IMG/VR virus record: IMGVR_UViG_3300009108_000751
Location: 62,001-126,000 of that record
Reading direction: 5' to 3' (one strand)
Length of the DNA stretch: 64,000 bases
Position 1 is the stretch's first letter. Each line of letters begins with the position of its first letter. A program made the translations under genes and the position numbers. The notes beneath the pieces were generated by a model. It saw nothing but the letters and a program-made list of their open reading frames with translations. It searched no databases and was not told the origin of the DNA. Shown one piece after another: positions 1-62,606 of this stretch.

Positions 1-864
1 ATTAACTGCCACTCCTACAAGACTTATGAGCTTGTTAGTCAGAGACACCCGACAAAAACTAATTTTATACCTCATGCTCTTCCGGAAGACATTTACTTTC
101 CTATGAAACCCGAGGAGGTTAAGTCAAATAAAAAGCTTCTTTTAGGTGAAGATAGACTAGATCACTTTACTGGAATCTGGATTAATCGAAACGCTAAGCG
201 CAAAAGACCGAATGATGTCTTGATGTCTTGGAAGATGTTTTTAGATGACCTGGAAAAAAAGCACGGTCATAGAAATGCAACTTTGATCATGCACACTGAC
301 CCTTTTGATCAAGAGGGCCCAAATCTACAGAGCACAATGGAGCTACTTGGTATTGTAGATAACGTCTCTATATCAGCGCAGAGGATAGACTTTAATCAAA
401 TGAATGTCCTTCATAACATATCTGATTTCTGTGTCAATATTGCTCTGAATGAAGGATTTGGGTTAACCACCCTAGAATCAATGCAGTGTGGAAAACCGAT
501 AATCGCACTTAAGACAGGAGGCCTAACAAGGCAGGTAGTAGATCATAGAGATGGATCTGAGAACGGAATAGCGCTAGATCCTGATGTTAGATCTCTTGTG
601 GGGAGTCAAATGGTCCCCTATATTTACGAAGACTACTGCAAAAATGAAAGTACTTCTGAGGCTTTTATGAAGATGTATGAGCTCGGACCAGAAGGTAGAA
701 AGAAACTAGGGCAAAAAGCTAGAGAATATGTGCTGTCAGAATTCAAGCTTGAAAAGACTGTTGATTTGTGGGATGAGAGCTTAACAAAGCTCATCGAAGA
801 CTGGAAAAATGACAGGGAAAAAATCTATAAACCCTGGAGAATGAAAGAGATGTCAGGAAAATGA
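1..864 (+). CDS. Glycosyltransferase family 4 (GT-B), 5'-truncated by window edge
   Basis: Frame is open from base 1 (INCHSY...) into the listed ORF at 103; INRNAKRKR and ALNEGFGLTTLESMQCGKPIIA match the GT4 E-x-F-G-x4-E motif. Confidence 0.9.
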   Translation: MNCHSYKTYELVSQRHPTKTNFIPHALPEDIYFPMKPEEVKSNKKLLLGEDRLDHFTGIWINRNAKRKRPNDVLMSWKMFLDDLEKKHGHRNATLIMHTDPFDQEGPNLQSTMELLGIVDNVSISAQRIDFNQMNVLHNISDFCVNIALNEGFGLTTLESMQCGKPIIALKTGGLTRQVVDHRDGSENGIALDPDVRSLVGSQMVPYIYEDYCKNESTSEAFMKMYELGPEGRKKLGQKAREYVLSEFKLEKTVDLWDESLTKLIEDWKNDREKIYKPWRMKEMSGK

Positions 865-2027
865 GAAAAGTTGTTTTAAGAGCACCTGTTCTTACACAAA
901 GTGGATACGGAGTTCACAGCAGGCAAGTGGCACGCTGGCTCATCGGCTTAGCAGAAACTAACCAGATCAACTTGACAATTCAATGCGTGCCCTGGGGTGA
1001 TACTACGTGGTTTACTAATGGCGATGCACTTGAGGGATTAATTAATAAGATTTTCAAATATTCGGGAGGAGAGGTTCAAGATGCCGACGTTTCCTTCCAA
1101 GTGATTCTTCCAAATGAGTGGCAAAATATTGCCAAGTATAATGTGGGAATAACTGCAGGAATAGAGACAGATAGGTGCCATCCCAGCTGGATAAACGCAG
1201 TAAACTCTATGCACGCTGTAGTAGTACCGTCAGAGCATGCCAAGAAATGCTTTACAAATACGGGAAGAATAAACAAGGATATTATTGTTATTCCTGAGTC
1301 TTTCCCGGATGTTCTCACCCAAGAACCAGATCTTGAAAAATTTGACTTTAACACCGACTTCAATTTTCTTGTTTTCGGGCAGCTTACAGCCATGAATTTT
1401 CAAGATGATAGAAAAAATATTTTCAACACGCTTAAGGTTCTGGTCAATACTTTCAAAGATAAGGAAGATGTCGGGATTATTCTAAAGTCTAATGTAGGTC
1501 GATCTACAATCATGGATTTTAAGCAAATTCAGGGAGTTTTGACTGCACTCTTAAAATCTATAGGGCACAAAGGAAGTCCAAAAGTTTATCTCTTGCATGG
1601 AAATATGTCTGATGACGATCTACGTGATCTTTATAAGCACCCGAAAGTTAAAGCCCTTGTAACGATGACAAGAGGAGAAGGCTTTGGCCTACCGATCTTA
1701 GAATCAGCTGCATGCGGAGTTCCTGTCGCCGCCACACGCTGGTCAGCCCATACTGATTACATGAAAAGAGATTCTTATTTGAATATCAAATACGATCTTG
1801 TAGAGGTTAGCGATTCCAGAGTTGACGGTAATCTGTTTATCAAGGGAATGAAGTGGGCAGAAGCAAGTGAAAAATCTGCATCTGAGGAGTTAGAAAAGCT
1901 TTATAAGTATTATTCTGTTTATGATAAAAGAGCTCGTGCACACCAGGAGGTAATCCTTGAAAGTCACAGCTTTGATTCGATTCAGGGCAAATACCAAGAG
2001 CATTTTTATAAGCTACTATGTTCATAG
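861..2027 (+). CDS. Glycosyltransferase family 4 (GT-B)
   Basis: TQSGYGVHSR N-terminus and TRGEGFGLPILESAACGVPVAAT motif; ATGA overlap with upstream gene. Confidence 0.9.
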   Translation: MRKVVLRAPVLTQSGYGVHSRQVARWLIGLAETNQINLTIQCVPWGDTTWFTNGDALEGLINKIFKYSGGEVQDADVSFQVILPNEWQNIAKYNVGITAGIETDRCHPSWINAVNSMHAVVVPSEHAKKCFTNTGRINKDIIVIPESFPDVLTQEPDLEKFDFNTDFNFLVFGQLTAMNFQDDRKNIFNTLKVLVNTFKDKEDVGIILKSNVGRSTIMDFKQIQGVLTALLKSIGHKGSPKVYLLHGNMSDDDLRDLYKHPKVKALVTMTRGEGFGLPILESAACGVPVAATRWSAHTDYMKRDSYLNIKYDLVEVSDSRVDGNLFIKGMKWAEASEKSASEELEKLYKYYSVYDKRARAHQEVILESHSFDSIQGKYQEHFYKLLCS

Positions 2028-2299
2028 GCCTGATTACATTAAGTATAATATGCGCCATCCAGTTCTTTTTTATAGTTAGATTTGCAAGAGCTGTATTTCA
2101 ATTTGAAGACAGGATCGAGATCGCGCTAGATAAGATAGATGAGTCTTACAGCGTAATTAGTGAGATATTAGAGCGACCTCTTTTTTTTGACAGTCCTGAA
2201 ATTAGAGAAGTTCATAGGCAGATTGGCATGGTCAACACCTATTTACTGAGTGTCGCAAGCGACTTGGCTAATGTTGAAGTCGATCAAGAAGAGGAATGA
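2018..2299 (+). CDS. Small protein with N-terminal transmembrane helix, unknown function
   Basis: Hydrophobic first ~24 aa followed by helical acidic region; fills gap between GT and sigma genes. Confidence 0.6.
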   Translation: MFIGLITLSIICAIQFFFIVRFARAVFQFEDRIEIALDKIDESYSVISEILERPLFFDSPEIREVHRQIGMVNTYLLSVASDLANVEVDQEEE

Positions 2300-2302
2300 G
2301 AT

Positions 2303-3070
2303 TTGACAACTACCAAAAAAGGCAAAGGTAAGCGCAGAAGAAAAAATACAGATCCCAAAGTAGCCCAAAAGAAAAAGCAGATAAAGCTGTATTTTAATGA
2401 AGGTACGCAGAAAGCAATAGAAGAATTCCAGGCGGCAGAAACTGATGAAGAAAAAAATAAGATCTACACTGAGTCTATTCTTCCGGCATTTGACAAGCTT
2501 TCAGAAAACTTAATCTTCATTCATAAGTTCACATCACTTCATGAATCTTACGAGGATTTAAAAAATGACTGCGTTACTTTTCTATATGAGACGCTTTATA
2601 AGTTTGATCCATCGAGAGGGACAAAGGCGTTTTCATATTTTAATGTCGTTGCAAAGAATTTTTTGATTATTAAGTCTAAGCAGAAGACAGCTTTTTTAAG
2701 GAGAAGCGTAAGTATAGAAGATGAAAGAATGTTTTCTGCGGGAGAAAGGCACTCTTACCAAGAAAAAAATGTAGTCGATAGTCCCGTAGCATCTCTGGTA
2801 AAAGAAGATGATCTTAGGCTGATATTTGGTATGCTTAAGCACCTCACAGGAGAGGCGAGAACTGACAATGAAAAAGCTTGCATCAACGCAATCACTACGC
2901 TGTTTGAAAACGCAAATGATCTAGAGTTTCTAAATAAGCGTGCAGTTTTTGTCTATCTTAGAGAGATGAGCGGACTATCACCTAAACAGCTTACGACTAC
3001 GATATCCAACCTTAAGAAAAAATATAGAGCATTGAAAGAAAACGATGAGTTCAGAATCTTCTTCGAATGA
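2303..3070 (+). CDS. gp55: T4 gp55-like late-transcription sigma factor (TTG start)
   Basis: EDLKNDCVTFLYETLYKFDPSRGTKAFSYFNVVAKNFLI resembles sigma region 2 of gp55 (F-D/N-P-x-K/R...FxYF); YFN motif after basic N-tail; no region 4 seen. Confidence 0.8.
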   Translation: MTTTKKGKGKRRRKNTDPKVAQKKKQIKLYFNEGTQKAIEEFQAAETDEEKNKIYTESILPAFDKLSENLIFIHKFTSLHESYEDLKNDCVTFLYETLYKFDPSRGTKAFSYFNVVAKNFLIIKSKQKTAFLRRSVSIEDERMFSAGERHSYQEKNVVDSPVASLVKEDDLRLIFGMLKHLTGEARTDNEKACINAITTLFENANDLEFLNKRAVFVYLREMSGLSPKQLTTTISNLKKKYRALKENDEFRIFFE

Positions 3071-3368
3071 TCCAAAATCTAAAGAAGAGATTTGGACAGA
3101 AATATATCAGAATGCCTTCCAGGATAGGGAGAAAGCTAGTATGCTGGTTACCAATCTGTGGAAGGAAATAACAGCCGACCCGGAAAAACATATCCTGTAC
3201 GGAACTACAGTATCAAAATACCTAGAAAGAATGGCAAAGTCAAACGACCAGCTTGTTAAGCTAGCAGAGCTTATGCAAAAATCTGATATCGTTGCTGAAG
3301 AAGAAGATATTGACTTAGACGACGTGTACAGCAAGATGGATACAGTAAAAATAAAGCCGTCAGAGTAA
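3045..3368 (+). CDS. Hypothetical helical protein downstream of sigma factor
   Basis: 107-aa ORF overlapping sigma stop, helical/coiled pattern, acidic C-terminus. Confidence 0.65.
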   Translation: MSSESSSNDPKSKEEIWTEIYQNAFQDREKASMLVTNLWKEITADPEKHILYGTTVSKYLERMAKSNDQLVKLAELMQKSDIVAEEEDIDLDDVYSKMDTVKIKPSE

Positions 3369-3371
3369 ATT

Positions 3372-5018
3372 ATGAGCATGGAAGATTTAAAACATGGCGG
3401 TGACGTCCTCCCCGTACTTAATCAAAATTCAACAGTCATCAAGCAGGCATTGGTCCTGGAAATTGTTGATAACCCGGCTCAATTCAAAAATAATGACTTT
3501 CTTGATGTATTTCTCAAGAAGATCGGAAATGCTCCTACTCCCTATTTGAAGACTAGTCTACCAGGTCCTCTTAGAAGGCAGCTCAAGATGGCTCCGAGAA
3601 ATGCCGTGATTGCTATCTTGCTAGACGATACAAATGCAGCCTCCGGCGGCGCAAAGCTTTTTTATCCTCTTTTTTCCCAGCATTTATCCCTCCCAGTAAA
3701 ACCAGGAGAAAACGTATGGATTATCTCTGAAGCGCTACAAAGTCAATTCAGTGTAACTAAGAGCGAGGTACCGCAAGGAGATTCTGCAGTCGACGGAGAA
3801 TTAATTTGTAGCGGATACTGGATGTCAAGAGTAGTAGCTCCTGACTATGCAGACGATATAAATTTCACTCACGCCGATCGAAGCCGAAGCCAGGAATATG
3901 TTAACCAGCAAAAAGGAAAACGGCCAGCCCAGCTGGCACCCCCGCCGTTTCACAATGGTATTTATTCTAATGATCCTGAAAATCCAGGGTTGGTAAACAC
4001 TTACACTTTGCCGGCCACTAATGATTACAACAGAATCTACATAGAATCTCAATCTAATAGAAGGACGACTAGAGAGCCTGTTCCAGAATTTACCAAGCGC
4101 CCGGGTGATATAGTAATTCAGGGTTCTAACAATGCTTTGATCTGTGTAGGTGAGGATCGACCTAATCCTGGTAACGGTGAGTCCAACGTAAATTACAAAT
4201 CTGAGGCTCCTCTTGAAAAACCACGCCTCGATGCAAAAGCAGGCACTATTGACATGGTCGCCGGAAGAGCCCTGATTAGAGAGGGCGAAAGCTTTAAGTT
4301 CGATCCAGAAAAAATAACTACGGTTGCTAATGCCCGTGAAGGTGAAACAGAGAAAGAAAAGAGATCCTGGGCAAAACCCAATAATGAGCCGTCTCAAAAG
4401 ATAAACGAGGGTGACATAAGCTTTATTAAGGATCTTTCTCGAGTTTATATTTCTATGAAGACAGACGGTGACAAGAACCTTGGATATGAGGAGCCTAAGT
4501 TTCTTCCAAAGATAGGTGAAGAATTTCCTTCTGCTCCTGTAGACAGTTCTGCTTACGTGATATCACGTGCCAAAGAGATAAGAATAGTTGCAGCTCAAGA
4601 AAGAGACGAAGAAGGTGCAATATCCACTGATGTTGCTACTGCAGGCAGCATCCGCATAATCAAAGAAGGTACGAGAGACGAAGATGGGCACTCAATTGAC
4701 CAGGGTGTCATCCAGTTCAATCCTGACGGAACATTAGTCATCGACAGTCCATCGATGATCATTGGCTCTGGTAAAGAGGGTGCAAATGGCGAAGGTACAC
4801 AGGTCTACATCGGAAATAATGCCACTGAACCCCTAGTTCTTGGAAACGCGCTAAGAGTCTTTTTAGGAAAGCTGCTAGGTGCTATGGAGGCAAATGCCCC
4901 CAATTTTGTCGCCACGGGCGTTGGGCCGGGCATATTAAACCCTGCAATTCTAAGTGAGATATCAGCTTTTAAAGCCCAGCTGGATACGATTCTCAGTAAG
5001 AATGCTAAGACTAAGTAG
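3372..5018 (+). CDS. Baseplate central spike/hub, gp5/VgrG-like, no lysozyme domain seen
   Basis: OB-fold-like segment SLPVKPGENVWII, GDIVIQGSNNALI, C-terminal beta-strand repeats and EPLVLGNAL; lies upstream of gp25-like gene. Confidence 0.65.
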   Translation: MSMEDLKHGGDVLPVLNQNSTVIKQALVLEIVDNPAQFKNNDFLDVFLKKIGNAPTPYLKTSLPGPLRRQLKMAPRNAVIAILLDDTNAASGGAKLFYPLFSQHLSLPVKPGENVWIISEALQSQFSVTKSEVPQGDSAVDGELICSGYWMSRVVAPDYADDINFTHADRSRSQEYVNQQKGKRPAQLAPPPFHNGIYSNDPENPGLVNTYTLPATNDYNRIYIESQSNRRTTREPVPEFTKRPGDIVIQGSNNALICVGEDRPNPGNGESNVNYKSEAPLEKPRLDAKAGTIDMVAGRALIREGESFKFDPEKITTVANAREGETEKEKRSWAKPNNEPSQKINEGDISFIKDLSRVYISMKTDGDKNLGYEEPKFLPKIGEEFPSAPVDSSAYVISRAKEIRIVAAQERDEEGAISTDVATAGSIRIIKEGTRDEDGHSIDQGVIQFNPDGTLVIDSPSMIIGSGKEGANGEGTQVYIGNNATEPLVLGNALRVFLGKLLGAMEANAPNFVATGVGPGILNPAILSEISAFKAQLDTILSKNAKTK

Positions 5019-5648
5019 ATGGCGCTCGACCAACAAAAGCTTGTAGATGGTCTAAAAGACGCTTTTGCAAAAGGCAGAGAAGTAGAAGAGAAAACTACAC
5101 AAGATGACCAGGGAAACGAGGTTAAGGTAAGCGAGGCTAAGAATAGTCAATCTGACATCGCCGGCTTTATCGCAGATGCCATCATCACCTATGCTAGTGA
5201 TGCCGAGATAATGATTCCCATACCTTCGACGTTAATAGTGATAGCACCTCCAGCCCCACCCGATGCAGCCTCTGCAGGCGCGAAGCTGAAAGTGAAAACT
5301 GCCCAAGTGGGAAAGCCCGCGCTTCAGACAGCTATTCTTACCAGCATGAACACACAAGATGTGGCGATGACTGCCATCACGAGCGGGATCGTGGCATACG
5401 TTGCGGCTTCATTTATTGCGTTTGCAAATTCCATCAATACCATCACAGGTGCAGGAGCTGCAGTGATGGCTGTACCACCTCTGTTGGTTACGCCTCTTGC
5501 TGTAGGAATAGCGGGAGGTGAGGAGGATGATGTGATCAATGCGATGGCTACTGTGATTCACGCTTCTTTTCTGAGTACCCTCTTTACGGGAGCAGGCGCT
5601 AATACTGCTCCACCTGCTGCAGGTCCAATTGTCAGTACTCTCATGTAG
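5019..5648 (+). CDS. Ala-rich hydrophobic protein, candidate spike-tip/spike-associated protein
   Basis: Between spike and gp25 genes; three imperfect D-x3-(I/M)(A/T)-x2-I-x2-(Y/S) helical repeats. Confidence 0.4.
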   Translation: MALDQQKLVDGLKDAFAKGREVEEKTTQDDQGNEVKVSEAKNSQSDIAGFIADAIITYASDAEIMIPIPSTLIVIAPPAPPDAASAGAKLKVKTAQVGKPALQTAILTSMNTQDVAMTAITSGIVAYVAASFIAFANSINTITGAGAAVMAVPPLLVTPLAVGIAGGEEDDVINAMATVIHASFLSTLFTGAGANTAPPAAGPIVSTLM

Positions 5649-5651
5649 AGT

Positions 5652-5660
5652 ATATTTAAC
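5652..5660 (+). promoter_or_regulatory. Candidate late promoter ATATTTAAC
   Basis: ATA-N-TTA motif in intergenic gap before gp25-like gene; recurs in most larger intergenic gaps. Confidence 0.55.
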
Positions 5661-5727
5661 TGTTGAGCATGAATACTGATTAATAAAGTCAGTGTAGTAG
5701 TTAGTTATCTACAGGGTTGTGTACAAA

Positions 5728-6201
5728 ATGGCAGCTATAAGCTTTAAGAACGTGGGTGAGAAACTCGACGAATATCAAAATCGTCAAGCAGACATTTCAC
5801 CTACACCTATCGGTATTGCTACTCCCTTAAGGCTGAGTACTACGCAGCAAGATATTTTTGAGATGCACTACGCATTACAAGATCAAATTGAGGATAACTT
5901 AAGAAACCTTATTTTGACAAACCACGGAGAAAGATTAGGTTTATATGACTTTGGTGCAAATTTACAACCCATACTTTTTTCTTTAACGGGCGCATCTTTT
6001 GAAACTGAGTGCATGAGAAGAATTAAGGTGGCAGCAAGAAAATATTTGCCCTTTATTGATCTGGAGACTTTTGAGGTAGCAACTGACAATAGATCAACAA
6101 GTAAGAGTCTTGCGACCATAGCAATCACCCTGGCGTATGGAATACCTGCCTTAGGTGTGACTGGTAAAAAGATGAGCGTCTTGCTCACTGCAGGAGGATA
6201 A
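5728..6201 (+). CDS. gp25: Baseplate wedge protein gp25-like (ATG 5728 preferred to GTG 5719)
   Basis: QIEDNLRNLILTNHGERLGLYDFGANLQPILF is the gp25/GPW signature; followed by KYLPFIDL. Confidence 0.9.
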   Translation: MAAISFKNVGEKLDEYQNRQADISPTPIGIATPLRLSTTQQDIFEMHYALQDQIEDNLRNLILTNHGERLGLYDFGANLQPILFSLTGASFETECMRRIKVAARKYLPFIDLETFEVATDNRSTSKSLATIAITLAYGIPALGVTGKKMSVLLTAGG

Positions 6202-6204
6202 TAA

Positions 6205-8049
6205 TTGTCGACAAATACAAAAAACAGGTTGACTGCGATTAGAAACAGGTCTTTTTTAAACAAAGACTTCGGAGAGTTTCGTTCACAACTACTCGATTAT
6301 GCCCAGACGTATTTCCCAGATAGGATCCAAGACTTTTCAGAAGCCTCACTTGGCGGTTTATTCCTGGACATGGCAGCATATGTCGGAGACGTAACTGCGT
6401 TCTACCTAGATCACCAATTTAGAGAGCTTGATCCAGAAACTGCTGTTGAAAGAGAAAATATCGAACGCCTCGCGCGTAACGCGGGTGTAGATATTAGAGG
6501 AGCCTCACCCGCTGTATCTGAAGTAACATTCACATTAAAGGTCTCTTCTCAAAAAGTTGGAACAATTTACCAGCCGGCACAATTCTCATTACCCGTGATC
6601 AAGAAGGGCACAACGGTTTCTTCTGATAGCGGAATTACATTTGAACTAACAGAAGACCTAGACTTTGCAGAAAGAAATGAGTTAAATCAATTTTTAGCAG
6701 AAGTAGAAGTAAACGAGTTCAACTCAGATGGGACTCCTAAGAATTATTTTGTATCACGAAAAGGAACTTGCGTCTCAGGAGAAAGAGCGACAGAAAACTT
6801 CACAATTCCGGATGATCATGTCCCTTTTAGAACGATCGTTCTTGCTAATAGCAATGTAAGCGAAATACTAGATGTTAGAGATGATGACGGGAACGAATAC
6901 TATGAAGTGGACGCCCTTACGCAAGATACTGTATTTACAGCAATTCCTAATTTAGACGATGACAATAAAATTGTTAATGACATGATTGCCATCAAGTCGG
7001 CACCTCGTCGATTTGTAAAAGAGGGATCTTCAACCACGGGATTGACTACCCTTCGATTCGGATCTGGAAATCCAGGAACACTCGATGGAGATCTTATTCC
7101 TGATCCATCTGAATTGGCGCTACCTCTTTTTGGAAAGAAGACATTTTCTAAATTCACTATAGACCCAAACAATCTTTTAAAAACAAGAACGCTCGGTCTC
7201 TCGCCTAGAAATACAACCCTGCAAGTTCAATATAGATCCGGAGGAGGCTTGACGCATAACGTATCTGCAAGATCAATAAGCTCAGTTGCCGGACTTATCC
7301 TGGTATTTGAAAAATCTCCAACAGCAGCCGAAGCCCAAGCAGTTAGGGCATCGCTGTTTGTTACGAATGATGCCGAGGCATCGGGAGGAGAAGATCCTCT
7401 CACAATTGAGGAGATAAGAAGCCTTATCTCCGCTGCAAAAAATTCTCAAAATAGAATCGTAAGCAAGCAAGATCTACTATCTAGAATTTATACGATGCCT
7501 TCAACATTTGGAAGGGTTTTCCGAGCTGGAGTATCTGCCAGCGCCAGGAATCCTCTAGCAACTTCTCTTTTTATAGTCAATAGAGATATCGACGGAAGGC
7601 TTACGCTTTCTCCTGATGCTCTCAAGAAAAATTTAGTGACATACCTAAACGAGTTCAGGTTGATATCAGATGCTATTGATATACTTGATGCACCGATCGT
7701 TAATATAGGAGCTGAATTTAAAATAGCAGTTGATCCAAATTTTAGTCCTGATGCAGTTCTTAGATCTTGTATTGGAAAAATTATTAACTACACTAATGTT
7801 GAAAATTTTCAAATCGGAGAACCGATAAGGCAGTCTGATTTGATCAATTTAGTTTATAACACCCCGGGAGTTCTTTCTGTCGTCGATTTAAAGGTTGTCA
7901 ATAAGACGGGCAGTGAAGGTACTAGAAGTTACTCTCAGGTTGTCCACAATATACCTGTTAATACACGCAAGGGTTTGATCTTTCCTCCTGAGGGAGGAAT
8001 TTTTGAAGTTAAATTTCCTAGCCTAGATATTAAAGGTGCGATAGTTTGA
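6205..8049 (+). CDS. gp6: Baseplate wedge gp6 / baseplate J-like (TTG start)
   Basis: FLNKDFGEFRSQLLDYAQTYFP, DFSEASLGGLFLDMAAYVGD, LRFGSG, ASGGEDPLTIEEIR, RIVSKQD motifs. Confidence 0.9.
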   Translation: MSTNTKNRLTAIRNRSFLNKDFGEFRSQLLDYAQTYFPDRIQDFSEASLGGLFLDMAAYVGDVTAFYLDHQFRELDPETAVERENIERLARNAGVDIRGASPAVSEVTFTLKVSSQKVGTIYQPAQFSLPVIKKGTTVSSDSGITFELTEDLDFAERNELNQFLAEVEVNEFNSDGTPKNYFVSRKGTCVSGERATENFTIPDDHVPFRTIVLANSNVSEILDVRDDDGNEYYEVDALTQDTVFTAIPNLDDDNKIVNDMIAIKSAPRRFVKEGSSTTGLTTLRFGSGNPGTLDGDLIPDPSELALPLFGKKTFSKFTIDPNNLLKTRTLGLSPRNTTLQVQYRSGGGLTHNVSARSISSVAGLILVFEKSPTAAEAQAVRASLFVTNDAEASGGEDPLTIEEIRSLISAAKNSQNRIVSKQDLLSRIYTMPSTFGRVFRAGVSASARNPLATSLFIVNRDIDGRLTLSPDALKKNLVTYLNEFRLISDAIDILDAPIVNIGAEFKIAVDPNFSPDAVLRSCIGKIINYTNVENFQIGEPIRQSDLINLVYNTPGVLSVVDLKVVNKTGSEGTRSYSQVVHNIPVNTRKGLIFPPEGGIFEVKFPSLDIKGAIV

Positions 8050-8058
8050 GGTACATAG

Positions 8059-9609
8059 ATGTATAGACGACTAAAGGCTACTAAAGACACTTACATTACT
8101 AATAAGATTATTCGTAATAGTTTTAGGGCAACTGATTCCAATGTAGGCGAAGGAGCTACTCTAGATCTTTTTAAGCTTTATAATGAGAATAAGATTGCTG
8201 GTGATGACACTCCTATTGAGCTTACTCGGATTCTAATAAAATTTGACTTGAATCCCCTGCGCGCCCTCACGGGAAGCATACTTGACATAGACAGCACTTC
8301 CTTTAGGTGTGACTTAAAGCTTCACGATGTGTACGGAGGTCAAACTCTTCCTTCTAATTTCAAGGTTGCAGTCTTTCCTCTTTCACGATCATTTGATGAA
8401 GGAGTAGGAAGAGATGTTGTAAAGTTTCAAGACATCGACGCCGCCAACTTTATCACATCATCTGTGACAAATGCATCTCCCACGACCTGGCACCTTACAG
8501 GGGCAAATAAGCAAGGCCTTTTGGGTGCAGCGGATCTGGATATAATATCGTCTGGTAACTTAAACGATGGCGACGGTGTCGCTTTCTTGTATAGCGAGCA
8601 GACTTTCTTAGATGGTACTGAGGATCTTTCTGTCGATGTGACAAAGGTAGTTTCTGCTACATTAGCAAACCAGATACCTGATTTTGGATTTAGAATATCC
8701 TTTTCAGGAACGCAAGAGACAGATACAAAATCTAGATTTGTTAAGCGCTTTGCATCTCGCCACAATAGCAACACAAGAAAACAACCCTCTCTAGACGTTA
8801 GATATGACGATACTATTCAAGATTATCATAAGTCCTTCTTTTTTAACCTCTCAGGATCAATCTTTCTAAACAATTTTGAAAGAGGGCATGCGGCAAACGT
8901 AGTATCAGGCGCCGCCCTAACCCAGATCTCAGGCGACGATTGCATGAATTTAAAATTGCAGACGGGGTCGTACCAGAAAGTAGTATTGGCATCGCAGCAC
9001 TCTTACCCTGGAGGAACTTTGTTTTCCACCGGCGTATACTCAGCTTCATTTGCAATTGATAGCTTTGGTTCTTCTTCTGTAGACAATAACAATACGCTTG
9101 AGGATTTCATAAGGGACAGCGGATCAGTAACATTCACAACGTTTTGGCAGTCTATAGATGAAACAGTAGGTTACCATACGGGAAGCCTTAAAGTTATGGC
9201 TTCTGATACAACAGCATTTGATAATGATCCTGTTAGGTACACCCTGAATATAGCAAATCTTAAGGGAGCTTATAAGTCTGGACAAAAAGTTAGGCTAAGA
9301 ATGGTTGCTTTTGATGCAGACGAACAAGTAAAAGCCCTTAAGCTTCCGCTTTATCGATCTAGCATGATTTTAACCAAGTGCTATTATAGAATTAGAGACA
9401 CATACTCAGACGATGTAGTTATTCCTTTTGATGATGGCGACGGATATAATGGTACCCTTATGTCAACCGATTCAAAAGGAATGTATTTTGATATTTTTAC
9501 CGACGACCTGGACATGGGAAGAGTTTTCACAATTGATGTGAAGATAAAGAGAGATAACTCAACTCAAATATTCAAAAATGTCGGAGGAACTTTTAGGATA
9601 GATCCCTAA
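8059..9609 (+). CDS. Baseplate/virion structural protein with DNRLRE-like N-terminal beta domain
   Basis: KATKDTYIT...RILIKFDL...LKLHD...PLSRSFDEGVG pattern; baseplate operon context; GAGGT RBS at 8048. Confidence 0.55.
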   Translation: MYRRLKATKDTYITNKIIRNSFRATDSNVGEGATLDLFKLYNENKIAGDDTPIELTRILIKFDLNPLRALTGSILDIDSTSFRCDLKLHDVYGGQTLPSNFKVAVFPLSRSFDEGVGRDVVKFQDIDAANFITSSVTNASPTTWHLTGANKQGLLGAADLDIISSGNLNDGDGVAFLYSEQTFLDGTEDLSVDVTKVVSATLANQIPDFGFRISFSGTQETDTKSRFVKRFASRHNSNTRKQPSLDVRYDDTIQDYHKSFFFNLSGSIFLNNFERGHAANVVSGAALTQISGDDCMNLKLQTGSYQKVVLASQHSYPGGTLFSTGVYSASFAIDSFGSSSVDNNNTLEDFIRDSGSVTFTTFWQSIDETVGYHTGSLKVMASDTTAFDNDPVRYTLNIANLKGAYKSGQKVRLRMVAFDADEQVKALKLPLYRSSMILTKCYYRIRDTYSDDVVIPFDDGDGYNGTLMSTDSKGMYFDIFTDDLDMGRVFTIDVKIKRDNSTQIFKNVGGTFRIDP

Positions 9610-12600
9610 TGTCTTCGAAAGACAGATTACAAAACCAGCGCCCAGGCGTTTTTAGACCTTCCGTCGTGAGGGATGAAGGCGGTGGAGCAGGAGTAGTTAG
9701 ATTCATTACCCGGGCCGATCTTGATGCTGGGATATCTTATGAAGACTATTTCATTTACGATGAAAGTACGGGAATAAAATCAACGCAACAAATCCCGGTT
9801 GATTTTAGCAAGTTTCAAAATCATACATTTTTTAATTCTGCCCAAGCTAATGTCAATGTCACTTTTAACAGTCTTATTAATCACTATCCTTTCGATGGAT
9901 CACGAAAAGAATTAGAAAAGTTTTTGAACGGCCTTACGGGTTTTGATAATTACGTTCTTTCACAGTTTCCTACAAATTTAGGTGCACTCGTATTCTCCGG
10001 ATCGACGTCCGGAGCAGCAGATTCTGGGACATACATCGAAGTAAAAGACTTTTCAGGTGCAGATTTTGTCGACTTCTCATCAGATCGATCTGGAAAGAGC
10101 GTGCTCGCCCTGGATGAGAAAAGCTATACTGTAGAAACTCAGATTTTCCCTGCACCTCTAGCCAACGGTAATGAAGTACTTTTTCAAAAAGTTTCTGGTA
10201 GTACAAACGGCTACACGATGGCTATGAAATCTAACGTATCTACGACGGCTGCCGAAGTGATGTTTGCAATACGATCTGGGTCCGCCAACTTAATAGTATC
10301 AGCTTCTATCCCTAAAAATGAATTTAGCCACATTGCTGCTGTTTACGACAGATCTAAAGATGAGGGCAGGTTAAAGCTATATCTTAATTCTAAGCTTGTT
10401 GGGACTTCTTCCAATACTGCGATTTTCGGGCCCATAGACTTCAATAATTCATCTCTCTTTATTGGAACCGGCAGCATTCACCAGGGAATCTTGCATGATA
10501 GCGCAAACTTCACCCCCAGCAGGACATTCTCTGGCTCTTTGGACGAAGTGAGAATTTTTCAAGAAGCAAGAACTGAGCATCAATTAAAGTCCAATCAAGA
10601 GAGAAATGTATTCGCATCAGATCCGCTTCGTCTTTACTATAAGTTTAATGAGCCCTCATCTAGTTTCGGAGATAATTCAATTGTCTTAGATAGCAGCGGA
10701 AAATCCCTGCATTCTCGTGTATCTAACTACACGGTTTATAACAGGGTTACATCAAGTTATCCGGCAGCTCTTTCGTCTGAAGAAAGAAAATTCAATCCGG
10801 TGCTTTTCCCACAATTTGAAAAAGTTATCGATCTTAACGAAAAGTTGCTGGCATCTGCTAGCACATATGATAATGCGAATCCAAACCTTATAACAAGGCT
10901 TGTTCCATCACACTATTTTGATGAGGGCAAAAATTACTTTGCCATGAACACTACAGACGGTGACCTGATACTGCCGTACACCGGATCTTCAATTCCGGGA
11001 TCTGGTGATCTAGGCAGCTCACAGGTTCTAACTGCAATGCTTTTTGTGTGGGCTAAGTTTTTTGACGAGCTTAAAACATCCACAGACCAGTTCTCTAAAG
11101 TCTTAGATCCTGCATACACAAGCGATGAAGGGCTATCAGATTCATTCATTATGTTCCTCGTGAATCATTACGGTTTTGAACCGCCACCTATTCTTACAAA
11201 AGCGACCGCAGAGCAGTACTTTCACGGAGAAAATGTAAAGGGAACCTATACTAACATAGCAGAAAGCCTGCAGTCTATCAGGAACCAGATCCTTAGAAGG
11301 TTCCTTGTAAACATAAAGGATATCATTAGTTCGAAAGGTACGATCCACAGTGTCAAAGCAGCTTTGAGAGCTACTGGCCTGGATCCTGATATCTTAGTTA
11401 GAATCAAAGAATACGGCGGCCCTAAAAAATTTAGCTTCGCTCAGATGAGAACCAATCGATCAACCATACAGTCTTCTATAGACTTTAGTGGGTCAATGAA
11501 CAATACCCGAAATGAGACCATCGATGCGCAAGGATTCACAACATCATCTCCTCGGTTAATAGCTGACTTTTTGACAGGATCGAGAAGGTCTGTAGGTTTT
11601 CCTGAGCCCGTAGGTACATTTGTTCAGCCAAATACAACCTTTGGTGGCTACCACGGAGTAAGCAATGATCTCTCCGACGGATTGTTAACATCTGGGTCTT
11701 GGTCTTATGAGGGAATATATCGATTCCCAGTATCGGGTAGCTTTGCGCTTACACAATCAGCGGCCAGAATCCACATAACAGGAACAACAGCACCTTCTAC
11801 CAAGCACGGTGTCGCCGCCAACTTGCTAGTGATGTCCGGCGCGTCTCCTTCTGTTAAGCTCTTTCTTCGGGCTACCACAGATGCCTATACTGCCGCTGCA
11901 AAGAGGCCTCTTGAGATAACGCTTCCTGGGCCAGATGTGATGGATGGTGAAAAATGGAATCTTTCCTTTGGCAGGATAAGAAACGACCAGGCAGGAACTC
12001 ATCTCTCATCATCGTACTTCTTGAGATGTGCCAAGCAAGAAGGTGGCAGGATATTTGAGTCTTACACGACAGCTTCTTTTTACAAGGAAGACCCGACAGG
12101 CACTGCGTCAAAAGTAGTTTTCCAAAAATCAGGATCCCTAAACACCTCAGGATCGTTTATTGTCATCGGATCCCAGTCTCTGGATACATCTGCAAATTTA
12201 TTCTTAAACGGGCCAGATATTGATGATCAGGCCCAGATAACAAATTTCAGCGGCGAAGTAGCTCAGGTCCGATTTTGGTCAAAAGCGCTCACTGAACCTG
12301 AGTGGAAAGAACATGTAAGGAATCCAACTTCTGTAGGCGTTGAAGCCCCTAGAAAGAATTTTAATTTCAACACAGCGATTACAGGTGCTTTTGAAAGGCT
12401 AAGAATGGATCTTTCCATAGACCAGCCGATCTCAGCATCAGATTCCTCCGGCCAGATTATCTTGACAGACTTCTCGCAAAACAATATTCATGGCACAGGA
12501 TCTGCTTTTGAAGCTTCTAAGACACTGTTTAATTTTGAGAAAGTCAACTTCACTACACTTCCGCCCGCATTTGATGATCTTGAAAACTCTAACAAGATTC

Positions 12601-13121
12601 GACCGCGAAGCTTTGTAAGCTCTTCTAATATTACTGATTTTAGCGCTGCAAAAGCTCCTCTTTATGAGATACCTCCCAACGATCAGCCCCAGGATGACGC
12701 AAGGTTCTCTATAGATTTCTCAGTAACGTCTGCGTTAAACGAAGATATTGTCACTATGTTTGGAACGCTTGACGAGATAGATGACGCTCTTGGCGGAGCC
12801 AATTTACAGTTTTCAGCTGATTATCCCCAACTCCAGGTTTTGCGTGATAATTACTTTAACAAGCTAGAGGAAAAAGTAAGCTTTAAGCAATTTTTAGAAT
12901 TCTTTAGGTGGTTTGATACATCTGTTGGAACCATGCTTGAACAACTCGTTCCAAAAAATTCTAATTTCTTAGGTGTTAACTTTGTTATAGAGCCTCACAG
13001 TCTAGAGCGAGCCAAAGTTCAGTACCAGTATAATGGACAGTATATCGGCGAAGACTTTAGGACTGATCTTAAGGGCCAGTATCTATTACAGCTAATTGAA
13101 GGAAGAGCGAGCAAGTTCTGA
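9609..13121 (+). CDS. Large baseplate protein with LamG/concanavalin-like domains and gp7/gpI-like KGT segment
   Basis: FSHIAAVYD...LKLYLNSKL...FSGSLDEVRIF and FSGEVAQVRFWSKALT (LamG); IISSKGTIHSVKAAL. Confidence 0.65.
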   Translation: MSSKDRLQNQRPGVFRPSVVRDEGGGAGVVRFITRADLDAGISYEDYFIYDESTGIKSTQQIPVDFSKFQNHTFFNSAQANVNVTFNSLINHYPFDGSRKELEKFLNGLTGFDNYVLSQFPTNLGALVFSGSTSGAADSGTYIEVKDFSGADFVDFSSDRSGKSVLALDEKSYTVETQIFPAPLANGNEVLFQKVSGSTNGYTMAMKSNVSTTAAEVMFAIRSGSANLIVSASIPKNEFSHIAAVYDRSKDEGRLKLYLNSKLVGTSSNTAIFGPIDFNNSSLFIGTGSIHQGILHDSANFTPSRTFSGSLDEVRIFQEARTEHQLKSNQERNVFASDPLRLYYKFNEPSSSFGDNSIVLDSSGKSLHSRVSNYTVYNRVTSSYPAALSSEERKFNPVLFPQFEKVIDLNEKLLASASTYDNANPNLITRLVPSHYFDEGKNYFAMNTTDGDLILPYTGSSIPGSGDLGSSQVLTAMLFVWAKFFDELKTSTDQFSKVLDPAYTSDEGLSDSFIMFLVNHYGFEPPPILTKATAEQYFHGENVKGTYTNIAESLQSIRNQILRRFLVNIKDIISSKGTIHSVKAALRATGLDPDILVRIKEYGGPKKFSFAQMRTNRSTIQSSIDFSGSMNNTRNETIDAQGFTTSSPRLIADFLTGSRRSVGFPEPVGTFVQPNTTFGGYHGVSNDLSDGLLTSGSWSYEGIYRFPVSGSFALTQSAARIHITGTTAPSTKHGVAANLLVMSGASPSVKLFLRATTDAYTAAAKRPLEITLPGPDVMDGEKWNLSFGRIRNDQAGTHLSSSYFLRCAKQEGGRIFESYTTASFYKEDPTGTASKVVFQKSGSLNTSGSFIVIGSQSLDTSANLFLNGPDIDDQAQITNFSGEVAQVRFWSKALTEPEWKEHVRNPTSVGVEAPRKNFNFNTAITGAFERLRMDLSIDQPISASDSSGQIILTDFSQNNIHGTGSAFEASKTLFNFEKVNFTTLPPAFDDLENSNKIRPRSFVSSSNITDFSAAKAPLYEIPPNDQPQDDARFSIDFSVTSALNEDIVTMFGTLDEIDDALGGANLQFSADYPQLQVLRDNYFNKLEEKVSFKQFLEFFRWFDTSVGTMLEQLVPKNSNFLGVNFVIEPHSLERAKVQYQYNGQYIGEDFRTDLKGQYLLQLIEGRASKF

Positions 13122-58883: not shown

Positions 58884-59097
58884 GAAGTTTCCCGCAGAAT
58901 ATGGTGTCGTTGTAAGGTCTAGACCAAGAGAAAGTACCGACAAATTAATTGCCCGTTTTAAGAGGATGTATAAGCGCTCTGGGTTACAAACTGAAGTAAG
59001 AGAAACGTATATGCAGCGCTTTATGTCAAGATCAGAGAAAAAGAGAATGAAAAAAAATAGAGCAAAGAGAAGGGCTCTGAAAAACAGCAAAGGGTGA
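58864..59097 (+). CDS. rpsU: Phage-encoded 30S ribosomal protein bS21
   Basis: VVVRSRPRESTDKLIARFKRMYKRSGLQTEVR...FMSRSEKKRMKKNRAKRR aligns by eye with bacterial S21 ([30 protein letters not shown]...YEKPTTERKRAKASAVKR); start may be 58864 or 58870. Confidence 0.85.
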   Translation: MKMKRSKKFPAEYGVVVRSRPRESTDKLIARFKRMYKRSGLQTEVRETYMQRFMSRSEKKRMKKNRAKRRALKNSKG

Positions 59098-59115
59098 TTT
59101 TTTCTTCGAATAATC

Positions 59116-59124
59116 ATATTTAAC
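59116..59124 (+). promoter_or_regulatory. Candidate late promoter ATATTTAAC
   Basis: Intergenic upstream of scaffold/capsid genes. Confidence 0.6.
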
Positions 59125-59144
59125 AGTGTAGATGGGTGAGGACT

Positions 59145-62514: not shown

Positions 62515-62523
62515 GCGACAATA

Positions 62524-62572
62524 GAAACTTCGGTTTCATGAAGGGGAGTCCGAAAGGGCTCCCCTTTTTTTT
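62524..62572 (+). terminator. UUCG mini-hairpin plus GAAA-tetraloop intrinsic terminator
   Basis: GAAAC-TTCG-GTTTC (62524-62537); GGGGAGTCC-GAAA-GGGCTCCCC (62543-62564) followed by T8. Confidence 0.92.
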
Positions 62573-62606
62573 GTCTCTTTATTTCCTTAAGATTCCAGCA
62601 CGGGAA

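What the first reader, a model, noticed from the sequence alone, without database searches (positions are those of the whole stretch)
1..2027. Two GT4 glycosyltransferases at the head of the virion operon
Seen: two tandem, translationally coupled GT-B enzymes run directly into the late sigma factor and baseplate genes, with no terminator found between them. Established: GT4 enzymes transfer nucleotide-sugars; virion protein glycosylation by phage-encoded GTs near structural genes is known in some mycobacteriophages. Inference: these enzymes may glycosylate virion proteins rather than DNA or host surface (see sequon finding).
Basis: partly seen in the sequence, partly recalled or inferred. Interest (0 to 1): 0.6.

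Follow-up and report, generated by a model that had tools for sequence, protein, structure and literature searches.

The report
Conserved phage glycosyltransferase pair ending glycan island
Two real sugar-transferring enzymes, kept as a pair across a widespread group of large aquatic T4-like phages, are the fixed end of a highly variable 28-kb sugar-building gene island; what they glycosylate is unproven, with a phage protein likelier than DNA.

Summary
Window 1-864 is the 3' part of a 421-aa gene cut by the window edge, and 861-2027 encodes a 388-aa gene. Both are retaining GT4-type GT-B glycosyltransferases with intact EX7E motifs, joined by an ATGA overlap, and no gap or convincing terminator precedes the sigma-like and baseplate genes.

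"Head of the virion operon" is not supported. The window lies in a 235.7-kb metagenomic phage contig that is 96% coding and almost entirely on one strand. The pair is the last two genes of a ~28-kb island of ~30 soluble proteins: at least 10 GTs, NeuB, a CMP-transferase, GDP-mannose dehydratase, methyl- and carbamoyltransferases.

In 80 related viral contigs the inner block (Cas4-like nuclease, GT-A, GT-B, sigma-like, hub-like, gp25, gp6) is invariant and the outer island is hypervariable. A late-type motif sits before gp25, and a sigma-70-like promoter sits before GT-A. In distant cultured relatives (Flavobacterium phage immuto, Microcystis phage Mel-JY01) only nuclease-GT-GT is kept, far from the baseplate.

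DNA glycosylation is disfavoured: no hydroxymethylase, ThyX is present, and immuto DNA shows no glycosyl-nucleoside. No membrane export genes occur in 505 kb of islands. The best guess, at about 0.4, is cytoplasmic glycosylation of a phage (virion) protein. It is untested.

The parts
1..864 (+). GT-A: the 3' 287 codons of a 421-aa retaining GT4-type glycosyltransferase. The true start is 401 nt upstream of the window (contig 61599; L001:17599-18864).
   Evidence: Pfam PF00534 at 40-41 bits against a cut-off of 26.4. AF2 pLDDT 87 with a GT-B fold. VIA Z 36-37 to MshA, SPS and B736L. EX7E, RK and Gly-loop residues are invariant in 38 homologues.
861..2027 (+). GT-B: a 388-aa retaining GT4-type glycosyltransferase, with an ATGA overlap onto GT-A.
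   Evidence: Pfam PF00534 at 32.8 bits and phrog_2170 at 2.5e-24. AF2 pLDDT 92. The top Foldseek match is 3oy2, then BshA. EX7E is invariant in 39 homologues. Junction sequence. It is present next to GT-A in 80/80 related loci, with spacing of -4 or -1 nt in 49/80.
619..626 (+). One copy of the late-type motif (CTATATTTA-type) inside GT-A; probably chance.
   Evidence: Found. No ATATTTA occurs upstream of GT-B in 68 relatives.
2018..2299 (+). p93: a small acidic protein (pI 4.3) with an N-terminal hydrophobic helix; function unknown.
   Evidence: No family hit. Hydrophobic segment at residues 2-20. Conserved in 74/80 loci.
2303..3070 (+). A 255-aa basic protein (pI 9.3), a probable gp55-like late sigma factor.
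   Evidence: phrog_234 at E 2.9e-4. 9 of 31 homologues hit phrog_234, best 8.8e-7, with no competing family. No Pfam, NCBIfam or PDB-profile hit. Present in 80/80 loci.
3045..3368 (+). p107: a small acidic protein; function unknown.
   Evidence: No family hit. Present in 80/80 loci.
3372..5018 (+). p548: a possible baseplate hub or spike (gp5/gpV-like). This is a lead only.
   Evidence: The nearest named ESM Atlas clusters are Gp5_OB and Phage_base_V at score 0.90. No HMM hit. Present in 80/80 loci.
5019..5648 (+). p209: a variable ORF, found in only 2 of 80 relatives.
5651..5658 (+). Late-type promoter-like motif (TATATTTA) 68 nt upstream of gp25.
   Evidence: YATATTTA occurs 19 times on the + strand and once on the - strand, with 13 of 19 in the 4% of the contig that is non-coding. 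ATA.TTA lies upstream of gp25 in 55/67 relatives, against 0-7 in control sets.
5719..6201 (+). gp25-like baseplate wedge protein.
   Evidence: Pfam GPW_gp25 at 28.4 bits against a cut-off of 27.2, and phrog_43.
6205..8049 (+). gp6-like baseplate wedge protein.
   Evidence: phrog_6 at 3.9e-21.

Best explanation
GT-A and GT-B are two catalytically competent, soluble, retaining GT4 glycosyltransferases. They are inherited as a translationally coupled pair, always behind a Cas4-like PD-(D/E)XK nuclease gene, in a large lineage of aquatic Far-T4-like myophages.

In this phage they are the fixed, innermost end of a ~28-kb glycan-biosynthesis island (contig 36046-64027). The outer gene content of that island changes from phage to phage: nonulosonic acid, GDP-6-deoxyhexose, fucosyl-, sialyl- and sulfo-transferases, phosphonate, methyl and carbamoyl genes.

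Inferred mechanism. The pair works in the infected cell's cytoplasm with nucleotide sugars. Some of these are probably supplied by the usually co-conserved nucleotide-sugar dehydrogenase-like and SDR epimerase/dehydratase genes just upstream. The pair lays the conserved inner sugars on a conserved soluble acceptor, most likely a phage-encoded (virion) protein. The variable GTs of the island then extend that glycan into a strain-specific one.

The pair is probably transcribed from a sigma-70-like promoter together with the gp55-like late sigma gene, before the late baseplate operon that starts at gp25.

Shown: enzyme class, catalytic motifs, pairing, synteny, island variability, absence of membrane proteins, promoter motifs. 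Inferred: acceptor, donors, order of action, timing.
For: Enzyme identity. Pfam, the fold models and EX7E support GT4.

Lineage core. More than 3,300 and more than 3,900 homologous protein clusters were found, on contigs up to 364 kb. 526 IMG/VR contigs carry a relative. The phages with the closest major capsid proteins (LR756508, immuto, Mel-JY01, RM378) are the same ones that carry GT-A homologues.

Conservation. GT-A is the most conserved gene of the block, at a median 62% identity against 41% for gp25 and 49% for gp6. Many residues of its N-terminal (acceptor) domain are invariant, which points to a conserved acceptor.

Fixed core and variable island. The nuclease is present in 64/64 eligible loci, the epimerase in 51/61 and the dehydrogenase-like gene in 45/59. 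NeuB is present in 12/56, and the other island genes tested at their own position in 2-10 of 41-51 eligible loci. Island contents differ in L009, L011, L122, L123 and L124.

Cytoplasmic and soluble. No island protein of this contig, and none of 574 island ORFs (>=100 aa) in 59 relatives (505 kb), has >=3 predicted transmembrane segments. The N-domains are acidic, pI 5.8-6.1.

Not DNA. There is no ThyA-like hydroxymethylase and no TGT/DpdA, and ThyX is present. LC-UV-MS/MS of DNA from phage immuto, which carries the homologous pair, showed canonical dA, dC and dT plus fdPreQ1 only (PMC10516641).

Not host-derived. Full-length relatives in 185,579 species genomes occur only in about 15 MAG contigs of scattered taxa. 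Most of them keep the flanking nuclease and/or GT-B genes, and none is in an isolate genome.

Promoters.
Against: No direct evidence identifies any acceptor.

Adjacency to baseplate genes is confined to the close subclade. In immuto, Mel-JY01 and the 34-40%-identity MAG contigs the pair is not next to structural genes.

The promoter pattern suggests pre-late expression, which fits DNA or host-directed functions equally well.

Many GT4 enzymes that act on undecaprenyl-linked or lipid acceptors (PglA, WbnH, WaaG, PimA) are also soluble peripheral proteins and appear among the structural matches. The phage could therefore feed host export machinery.

The best structural neighbours also include small-molecule GT4s (MshA, BshA, SPS, TreT).

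N-X-S/T sequons are not enriched in structural proteins (196 observed against 177 expected).

The contig is estimated at ~70% complete, so the absence of hydroxymethylase genes is not absolute, and the TET/JBP control search was silent.
Confidence: 0.4

Rival explanations
1. Host envelope remodelling. The pair and the island build an oligosaccharide on a universal host lipid carrier or LPS/CPS intermediate. The host's own flippase, polymerase or ligase then exports it. This would change the infected cell's surface, for example to block superinfection, limit progeny loss on debris or avoid grazers.
For: The island's chemistry (NulO, 6-deoxyhexose, fucosyl-, sulfo- and phosphonate genes, O-methyl, carbamoyl) is typical of O-antigen or capsule loci. 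Structural neighbours include PglA, WbnH, WaaG and PimA. Source annotations read 'involved in cell wall biosynthesis'. Similar gene sets in cyanomyoviruses are usually read this way (PMC12801897). The sigma-70-like promoter fits early or middle expression.
Against: No initiating polytopic phosphoglycosyltransferase, flippase, polymerase, ligase or ABC permease appears in 574 island ORFs (>=100 aa) of 59 relatives, nor in this island. GT-A is a vertically inherited, very conserved core gene in phages of Bacteroidota and of a cyanobacterium, which is hard to reconcile with host-specific acceptors. The N-domains are acidic, without the basic membrane-binding character expected of lipid-acceptor GT4s (weak evidence). 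No relatives occur in isolate bacterial genomes.
Confidence: 0.25
2. Another soluble acceptor. The pair makes a small-molecule glycoside or a free oligo- or polysaccharide (as BshA, MshA, SPS, TreT or glycogen synthase do), or it glycosylates a non-virion phage or host protein during takeover.
For: The top sequence and structure matches include TreT, BshA, MshA, SPS, glycogen synthase and GlgM. The proteins are soluble and acidic. Expression is probably pre-late.
Against: Neither protein reaches the cut-off of any NCBIfam equivalog. Being embedded at the end of a many-GT island with capping sugars argues for a complex glycoconjugate rather than a simple metabolite. Fold-level similarity among GT4 enzymes does not indicate the acceptor.
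Confidence: 0.15
3. DNA hypermodification. The pair glycosylates modified bases in phage DNA to evade restriction, as T4 alpha/beta-GT and other 5hmC- or 5hmU-glycosylating enzymes do.
For: Phage GT-B enzymes do glycosylate DNA with diverse glycans (Pyle et al. 2024, as cited in PMC12619734). The pair always follows a nuclease gene and in distant relatives sits near replication genes. DNA alpha-GTs appear low in the viral fold list (ranks 38 and 42, TM about 0.5). Hypervariability would suit an arms race with restriction systems.
Against: There is no Pfam AGT or BGT match. There is no ThyA-like dCMP/dUMP hydroxymethylase and no DpdA. ThyX is present, which implies ordinary dTMP. DNA of the cultured relative immuto, which carries the homologous pair plus sugar genes, contains canonical dA, dC and dT and fdPreQ1 only. 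The proteins have neutral to acidic pI. NulO, phosphonate and sulfo chemistry is unknown on DNA.
Confidence: 0.05

Closest known systems
Chlorovirus and giant-virus autonomous glycosylation (PBCV-1 A064R and others; NY-2A B736L/PBCV-1 A546L GT4, PDB 3OY2)
   Same: These are virus-encoded soluble GTs, methyltransferases and nucleotide-sugar enzymes that build complex, strain-variable glycans in the cytoplasm without ER or membrane machinery. B736L is the top Foldseek match of both proteins and is tied for the top VIA score with MshA and SPS for GT-A.
   Different: Identity is only 15-17%. B736L's own acceptor is unknown (PMC9614988), and it also matches T4 alpha- and beta-GT by HHpred (PMC6024577), so the match is fold-level only. 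Those viruses infect eukaryotes; here the virus is a tailed phage, and the pair is fixed next to a Cas4-like nuclease.
Mycobacteriophage virion glycosylation (Freeman et al. 2023, known here only through citing papers)
   Same: Phage-encoded GTs lie close to structural genes, and glycans sit on capsid and tail-tube subunits.
   Different: tblastn at E <= 1e-5 found no mycobacteriophage hit for either protein, and only 24-26% partial hits to actinobacteriophage GTs (Streptomyces, Tetrasphaera). Here the island is about 28 kb with at least 10 GTs. Adjacency to structural genes is not conserved in distant relatives, and no glycoprotein evidence exists.
LPS / cell-wall gene clusters of marine cyanomyoviruses (P-SSM2, S-SCSM1, S-SCSM2R with 13 GTs; PMC12801897)
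   Same: These are also large, variable sets of GTs, epimerases and Kdo/NulO-type genes in marine T4-like phages, with an untested target.
   Different: They lie in a different phage lineage (Kyanoviridae). tblastn of either GT found no cyanomyovirus (P-SSM2/S-SCSM-type) hit. The organisation seen here, a conserved GT4 pair plus nuclease as a fixed anchor for the variable island, is not described in that paper.
T4 DNA alpha- and beta-glucosyltransferases
   Same: They share the GT-B fold and are phage-encoded.
   Different: There is no family match, and the hydroxymethyl-base pathway is absent.

Membership tests
GT4-type retaining GT-B glycosyltransferases (Pfam Glycos_transf_1, PF00534) | Match to PF00534/PF13692 above the curated gathering score | tested here: met
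   GT-A scores 40.1-41.5 bits and GT-B 32.8 bits against a cut-off of 26.4.
GT4-type retaining GT-B glycosyltransferases (Pfam Glycos_transf_1, PF00534) | Two-Rossmann-domain GT-B fold with a C-terminal helix crossing back | tested here: met
   AF2 models have pLDDT 87 and 92. VIA gives Z 36.9 to MshA and 36.0 to SPS and B736L over about 355-367 residues.
GT4-type retaining GT-B glycosyltransferases (Pfam Glycos_transf_1, PF00534) | EX7E motif and phosphate-binding R/K in the C-terminal domain | tested here: met
   GT-A has E285...E293 and R201/K202 invariant in 38 sequences. GT-B has E273...E281 and R184/K185 invariant in 39 sequences.
GT4-type retaining GT-B glycosyltransferases (Pfam Glycos_transf_1, PF00534) | Formal CAZy GT4 assignment (dbCAN/CAZy HMM) | not testable with these tools
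   No CAZy or dbCAN library is available. All close structural neighbours are CAZy GT4 or GT5 enzymes by my own knowledge.
T4-type DNA alpha/beta-glucosyltransferases | Match to the AGT or BGT family models | tested here: not met
   No such Pfam family appears at E <= 0.01. No T4 AGT or BGT chain is among the top 50 PDB matches.
T4-type DNA alpha/beta-glucosyltransferases | Co-occurring hydroxymethyl-pyrimidine pathway (ThyA-like hydroxymethylase or TET/JBP) | tested here: not met
   PF00303 gave no hit, with positive controls ringing. PF12851 gave no hit, but the control was silent, so that part is inconclusive. ThyX is present. The contig is ~70% complete.
Mycobacteriophage-type virion glycosylation module | Homology to the GTs of glycosylated mycobacteriophages | tested here: not met
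   tblastn against 50,697 phage records returned no Mycobacterium phage at E <= 1e-5.
Mycobacteriophage-type virion glycosylation module | Glycan attached to capsid or tail proteins | not testable with these tools
   This needs virion glycoproteomics.
Bacterial surface-polysaccharide gene cluster (Wzx/Wzy- or ABC-dependent) | Encodes polytopic membrane components (initiating transferase, flippase, polymerase or permease) | tested here: not met
   No protein with >=3 hydrophobic segments occurs in the island or among 574 island ORFs (>=100 aa) of 59 relatives. The method is a crude Kyte-Doolittle scan, which did detect a 4-segment protein elsewhere in the contig.
T4 gp55-type late sigma factor (the 255-aa neighbour) | Significant match to a gp55 family model | tested here: inconclusive
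   phrog_234 scores E 2.9e-4 for the window protein. 9 of 31 homologues match it, best 8.8e-7. No Pfam, NCBIfam or PDB-profile hit was found.
Heteromeric GT pairs (e.g. GtfA/GtfB-like) | Physical complex of the two subunits | not tested
Only the conserved tight gene coupling is known.

The most novel reading that the evidence does not exclude
Abundant aquatic Far-T4-like phages carry a lineage-wide, self-contained cytoplasmic protein-glycosylation system. A conserved GT4 pair primes a virion protein. A hypervariable island then builds strain-specific glycans capped with nonulosonic acids, fucose, sulfate, phosphonate, methyl or carbamoyl groups. The result would be in effect phage 'serotypes', a diversifying glycan coat on virions in the ocean.
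Probability: 0.3. Interest if true: 0.8.

Novelty: new variant of a known kind. Interest (0 to 1): 0.55.

Why it matters
Phage-encoded glycosyltransferases are usually filed as DNA-modifying enzymes or as host 'cell-wall' auxiliary genes. Virion glycosylation has been shown for only a few phage groups.

Here a GT4 pair is more conserved than the baseplate proteins across hundreds of environmental phage contigs. It anchors an island whose content turns over as bacterial O-antigen loci do.

If the target is the virion, the particles of a widespread aquatic phage lineage would carry diverse complex glycans. That would bear on adsorption, particle stability, decay and grazing, and it would add phage-made nonulosonic acids and phosphonates to marine organic matter.

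The question is directly testable, because cultured carriers of the pair exist: Flavobacterium phage immuto, Microcystis phage Mel-JY01 and Rhodothermus phage RM378.

Even if the target proves to be the host surface, the fixed-anchor plus variable-island architecture is a useful marker for annotating this lineage.

Tried and rejected
- blastn of window 1-6000 against the phage collection found no match.
- Terminator and sigma-70 consensus scans were at or below the shuffle expectation and were not used as evidence.
- N-X-S/T sequons are not enriched beyond composition: 442 observed against 421 expected genome-wide, and 196 against 177 in the structural region. S/T-rich windows gave nothing specific to capsid or tail proteins.
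- PADLOC gave no defence-system match for either GT. The nuclease is only Cas4-like.
- The weak PF20706 'GT4-conflict' hits fall below the cut-off and cover only the generic C-terminal domain, so membership was rejected.
- A profile of the sigma-like family against PDB found no gp55 or sigma hit.
- PHROGs and Pfam left p548, p516 and the genes at contig 19.8-25 kb unassigned.
- The 'moraphage' lineage, which has four core GT orthogroups (PMC12619734), was considered as the identity of this phage. It was not adopted, because that group is described as distinct from T4-type phages while this contig's capsid, portal, terminase and baseplate are T4-like.
- The late-type motif inside GT-A (window 619) was dismissed as chance because it is not conserved.
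- The large representative-protein search was not run, because the claim does not rest on absence of relatives.
Full report
WHERE THE WINDOW LIES
The window is bases 62001-126000 of a single 235,681-bp contig. It is an IMG/VR metagenomic virus record, linear, with a CheckV completeness estimate of ~70%. A simple ORF call gives 270 genes and 96% coding density, with almost every gene on the + strand. The contig encodes a T4-like terminase, portal, major capsid protein, gp25 and gp6.

Its capsid protein is closest to an uncultured 484-kb phage (LR756508), Flavobacterium phage vB_FspM_immuto, Microcystis phage Mel-JY01 and Rhodothermus phage RM378. That places it in the 'Far-T4' neighbourhood described by Roux et al. 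2015 (PMC4360716). Members of that group are predicted to infect Bacteroidota (PMC7198788).

CHECK OF THE OBSERVATION
The first ORF is cut by the window edge. The complete gene, called GT-A here, is 421 aa (contig 61599-62864; window -401..864). GT-B is window 861-2027 and 388 aa.
- Both pass the Pfam Glycos_transf_1 gathering score and hit PHROG glycosyltransferase families.
- AlphaFold2 models built on 38-39 homologues are confident, with pLDDT 87 and 92.
- Both superpose on retaining GT4 enzymes. Chlorovirus B736L (3OY2) is the top Foldseek match for both. For GT-A, VIA-align gives Z 36.9 to MshA and 36.0 to sucrose-phosphate synthase and B736L.
- The EX7E pair, an R-K phosphate-binding pair and the N-terminal glycine loop are invariant in both families, so both look catalytically active.
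- The two proteins share only the EGFGL...E segment with each other.
- Neither reaches the cut-off of any NCBIfam equivalog. They form their own GT4 subfamilies.
- The junction reads AGGAAA-ATGA, and GT-B overlaps the next ORF by 10 nt.
- No convincing + strand terminator lies between the pair and gp25. However, terminator-like hits are at chance level here, and tight unidirectional packing is a property of the whole contig.

WHAT LIES UPSTREAM
This changes the picture. Genes from contig 36046 to 64027 form one uninterrupted, co-directional block of about 30 genes. In order they are:
- a 650-aa GT2-domain protein, a GT2, and two GT4-like proteins;
- GDP-mannose 4,6-dehydratase, which passes the equivalog cut-off;
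- a methyltransferase, a GT4, a HAD phosphatase, and a NodU-like carbamoyltransferase;
- an APH-like kinase, a HAD-like protein, a methyltransferase, a GT2, and four unknown proteins;
- a PseF/KdsB-like cytidylyltransferase, a GT2, a probable methyltransferase, and a NeuB-type nonulosonic acid synthase;
- a short nucleotide-sugar dehydrogenase, an SDR epimerase/dehydratase, and a Cas4-like PD-(D/E)XK nuclease;
- then GT-A and GT-B.

A PIN-PhoH gene bounds the block on the left. None of these proteins has more than one predicted hydrophobic segment. The two GTs are therefore the last genes of a ~28-kb glycan island, not the head of an operon.

RELATIVES
Each GT has thousands of metagenomic homologues: 3,335 and at least 3,931 clusters at E <= 1e-5. 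They come from aquatic samples, among them Tara Oceans records, on contigs up to 364 kb. 526 IMG/VR contigs encode a GT-A relative.

In the 80 best loci (GT-A identity 59-100%), tblastn with this contig's proteins gave the following.
- Downstream, all in the same order: GT-B 80/80, p93 74/80, the sigma-like protein 80/80, p107 80/80, p548 80/80, gp25 79/79, gp6 77/77, p516 66/66.
- Upstream, conserved part: the nuclease 64/64, the epimerase 51/61, the dehydrogenase-like gene 45/59.
- Upstream, variable part: NeuB 12/56. The other island genes tested at their own position are present in 2-10 of 41-51 eligible loci, and the outer island genes are equally rare.
- GT-A, at a median 62% identity, is more conserved than gp25 (41%), gp6 (49%) or GT-B (44%).
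- GT-A to GT-B spacing is -4 or -1 nt in 49/80 loci and never more than 31 nt.

Annotated examples show how different the islands are.
- L009: NeuB, cytidylyltransferases and a GT29 sialyltransferase.
- L011: PEP mutase-cytidylyltransferase, a TPP decarboxylase, a B12-radical SAM enzyme and a sulfatase-like protein, i.e. a phosphonate pathway.
- L122: two NeuB genes.
- L123: GT10 and GT11 fucosyltransferases, a sulfotransferase, a DegT aminotransferase and GDP-fucose genes.
- L124: a kinase, a methyltransferase and NeuB-cupin.

In 505 kb of island sequence from 59 loci, none of 574 ORFs of at least 100 aa has three or more hydrophobic segments.

DEEPER RELATIVES
At 32-40% identity only the triplet nuclease-GT-A-GT-B survives.
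- In phage immuto the triplet is followed by its own sugar genes (GT2, WecE-type aminotransferases, an acetyltransferase, an epimerase). It lies beside DNA polymerase, chaperonin and lysis genes.
- In Mel-JY01 it lies beside DNA polymerase and clamp-loader genes.
- In immuto the sigma-like gene sits 27 kb away in a conserved 'small ORF, sigma-like, small ORF..., gp25, gp6' module.
- MAG contigs at 34-40% identity likewise keep the triplet without the baseplate module.

Adjacency of the GT pair to the baseplate genes is thus a juxtaposition of two conserved modules, specific to the close subclade.

In one genome per 185,579 prokaryote species, full-length GT-A relatives occur only in about 15 MAG contigs of scattered taxonomy. 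Most keep the flanking nuclease and/or GT-B genes, four carry the full sigma-baseplate block, and none is in an isolate genome. One lone copy lies in a 1.38-Mb Lysobacterales contig next to an IS21 remnant. The family therefore does not cluster with host LPS enzymes.

TRANSCRIPTION SIGNALS
Two motif classes stand out in the contig.
- GTGTAA-N16-17-TATAAT occurs 24 times on the + strand and once on the - strand. It is clustered at 0.8-17.7 kb, with a few at 146-215 kb and none between 19.8 and 109 kb. This looks like an early class.
- YATATTTA occurs 19 times on the + strand and once on the - strand. 13 of 19 copies lie in the 4% of the contig that is non-coding. They stand in front of gp25, the portal gene, the capsid-region genes and others. 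This looks like a late class.

The late-type motif lies 68 nt upstream of gp25 (window 5651). ATA.TTA is found there in 55/67 relatives, against 0-7 in four control sets and 3/64 upstream of GT-A.

The 54-nt gap before GT-A is the only gap of 35 nt or more in the 27 kb between contig 34.5 kb and 61.5 kb. It carries TTTATA-N17-TATGAT. A TTtACt-N15-18-TAtgaT pattern occurs upstream of GT-A in 24/64 relatives under a loose definition (controls 1-4) and in 9/64 under a strict one (controls 0).

I infer that GT-A, GT-B and the gp55-like gene form a unit read by unmodified host polymerase before late transcription. The late baseplate operon then starts at gp25. This is motif evidence only. No RNA data could be obtained.

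The sigma assignment itself is modest. phrog_234 scores E 2.9e-4 for the window protein, and 9/31 homologues match it, best 8.8e-7. Pfam, NCBIfam and a PDB profile search gave nothing.

WHAT IS THE ACCEPTOR?
DNA is disfavoured.
- There is no AGT or BGT family match, no ThyA-like hydroxymethylase and no DpdA.
- ThyX is present.
- Published LC-UV-MS/MS of immuto DNA found canonical dA, dC and dT plus 7-formylaminomethyl-7-deazaguanine and nothing glycosylated (PMC10516641).
- The TET/JBP search was uninformative because its control was silent.

A host lipid-linked acceptor remains possible. Soluble GT4 enzymes such as PglA, WbnH and WaaG act on such acceptors and are among the structural matches. 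But the phages never encode the membrane steps. The N-domains are acidic. Strong vertical conservation across phages of different host phyla also fits a phage-encoded or universal acceptor better.

Small-molecule acceptors (BshA, MshA, SPS, TreT-like) cannot be excluded from fold alone.

The combination seen here is a conserved acceptor domain, conserved inner nucleotide-sugar genes, an outer island that diversifies with capping sugars, no membrane machinery, and co-inheritance with the structural core. It most resembles the autonomous cytoplasmic protein glycosylation of chloroviruses and mimiviruses (PMC9614988) and the virion glycosylation reported for mycobacteriophages (cited).

I therefore rank the readings as follows:
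- glycosylation of a phage, probably virion, protein: about 0.4;
- host-envelope remodelling: about 0.25;
- another soluble acceptor: about 0.15;
- DNA: about 0.05.

The remainder is left open. N-X-S/T sequons give no support.

KNOWN OR NEW?
Phage GTs, virion glycosylation and large 'LPS' gene sets in marine myoviruses are known. In the papers I could search I found no description of this conserved nuclease-GT4-GT4 anchor with a hypervariable island in Far-T4-type phages. The Far-T4 papers do not mention glycosyltransferases. A 2022 inventory found no PEP mutase in RefSeq viral genomes or in 364 huge-phage genomes (PMC8942020), whereas relatives of this phage carry one.

I rate the finding a new variant of a known kind. 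It is interesting mainly because it is widespread and testable in cultured relatives.

LIMITS
- All functional statements about acceptor, donors and timing are inferences.
- The contig may be incomplete.
- The transmembrane scan is crude.

Noticed in passing
contig 36046-61544 (upstream of the window; L008:10046-20000 and L001:1-17544): A ~28-kb glycan-biosynthesis island of about 30 soluble proteins. It holds five GT2-type and three further GT4-like genes, GDP-mannose 4,6-dehydratase, a NeuB-type nonulosonic acid synthase with a PseF/KdsB-like cytidylyltransferase, a NodU-like carbamoyltransferase, an APH-like kinase, HAD phosphatases, 3-4 methyltransferases and about seven unknowns. A PIN-PhoH gene bounds it on the left.
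   Followed up: yes
L011:415-4899 (also L012): A relative's island encodes a PEP mutase-cytidylyltransferase fusion, a TPP decarboxylase, an Fe-ADH and a B12-radical SAM enzyme, i.e. a phage-borne phosphonate pathway. A 2022 inventory found no PEP mutase in RefSeq viral genomes or 364 huge-phage genomes (PMC8942020).
   Followed up: partly
L009:2741-3430; L123:2210-6527: Other relatives carry a GT29 sialyltransferase, or GT10 and GT11 fucosyltransferases plus a sulfotransferase. These families are more familiar from animal-type glycans.
   Followed up: no
contig 860-17715, plus 145987, 168184, 172940, 199505 and 215259 (outside the window): A sharply defined promoter class, GTGTAA-N16-17-TATAAT, occurs 24 times on the + strand and once on the - strand. 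It is concentrated in a small-gene region at the left end and is presumably early.
   Followed up: partly
window 5651, 14446, 53518, 57786, 59115 and others (contig 67651, 76446, 115518, 119786, 121115...): The late-type motif YATATTTA occurs 19 times on the + strand and once on the - strand, with 13 of 19 copies intergenic. It is depleted inside genes and on the opposite strand. It differs from T4's TATAAATA.
   Followed up: partly
window 60598-62514: The major capsid protein is 638 aa. Only ~60% of it aligns, in two pieces, with its closest relatives, which suggests a lineage-specific insertion of about 250 residues. A Ser/Thr-rich stretch lies near residue 175.
   Followed up: no
L001:14963-15820 (contig 58963-59820): The conserved nucleotide-sugar dehydrogenase is only 285 aa. 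It matches model positions 61-295 of 413, so it lacks the usual C-terminal UDP-binding domain. The short form is also seen in relatives (292-338 aa).
   Followed up: no
L099:7833-9215: A lone GT-A homologue (57% identity) sits in a 1.38-Mb Lysobacterales MAG contig among housekeeping genes and beside an IS21 IstB remnant. It lacks GT-B, the nuclease and other phage genes. It may be a transfer into a bacterium or an assembly chimera.
   Followed up: partly
window 2018-2299 and 3045-3368: Two small acidic proteins (pI 4.3 and 4.6) flank the sigma-like gene in 74-80 of 80 relatives, and small ORFs occupy the same flanking positions in phage immuto. One could be a gp33-like late co-activator. This is speculation only.
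   Followed up: no
contig 163613-164194 (outside the window; L013): A ThyX flavin-dependent thymidylate synthase is present, while no ThyA-family gene, TGT or DpdA was found in the contig.
   Followed up: yes
window 18427-25305: A 2,292-aa ORF has the highest absolute number of N-X-S/T sequons (45). That count is consistent with its composition and is probably typical of a fibre or large structural protein.
   Followed up: partly
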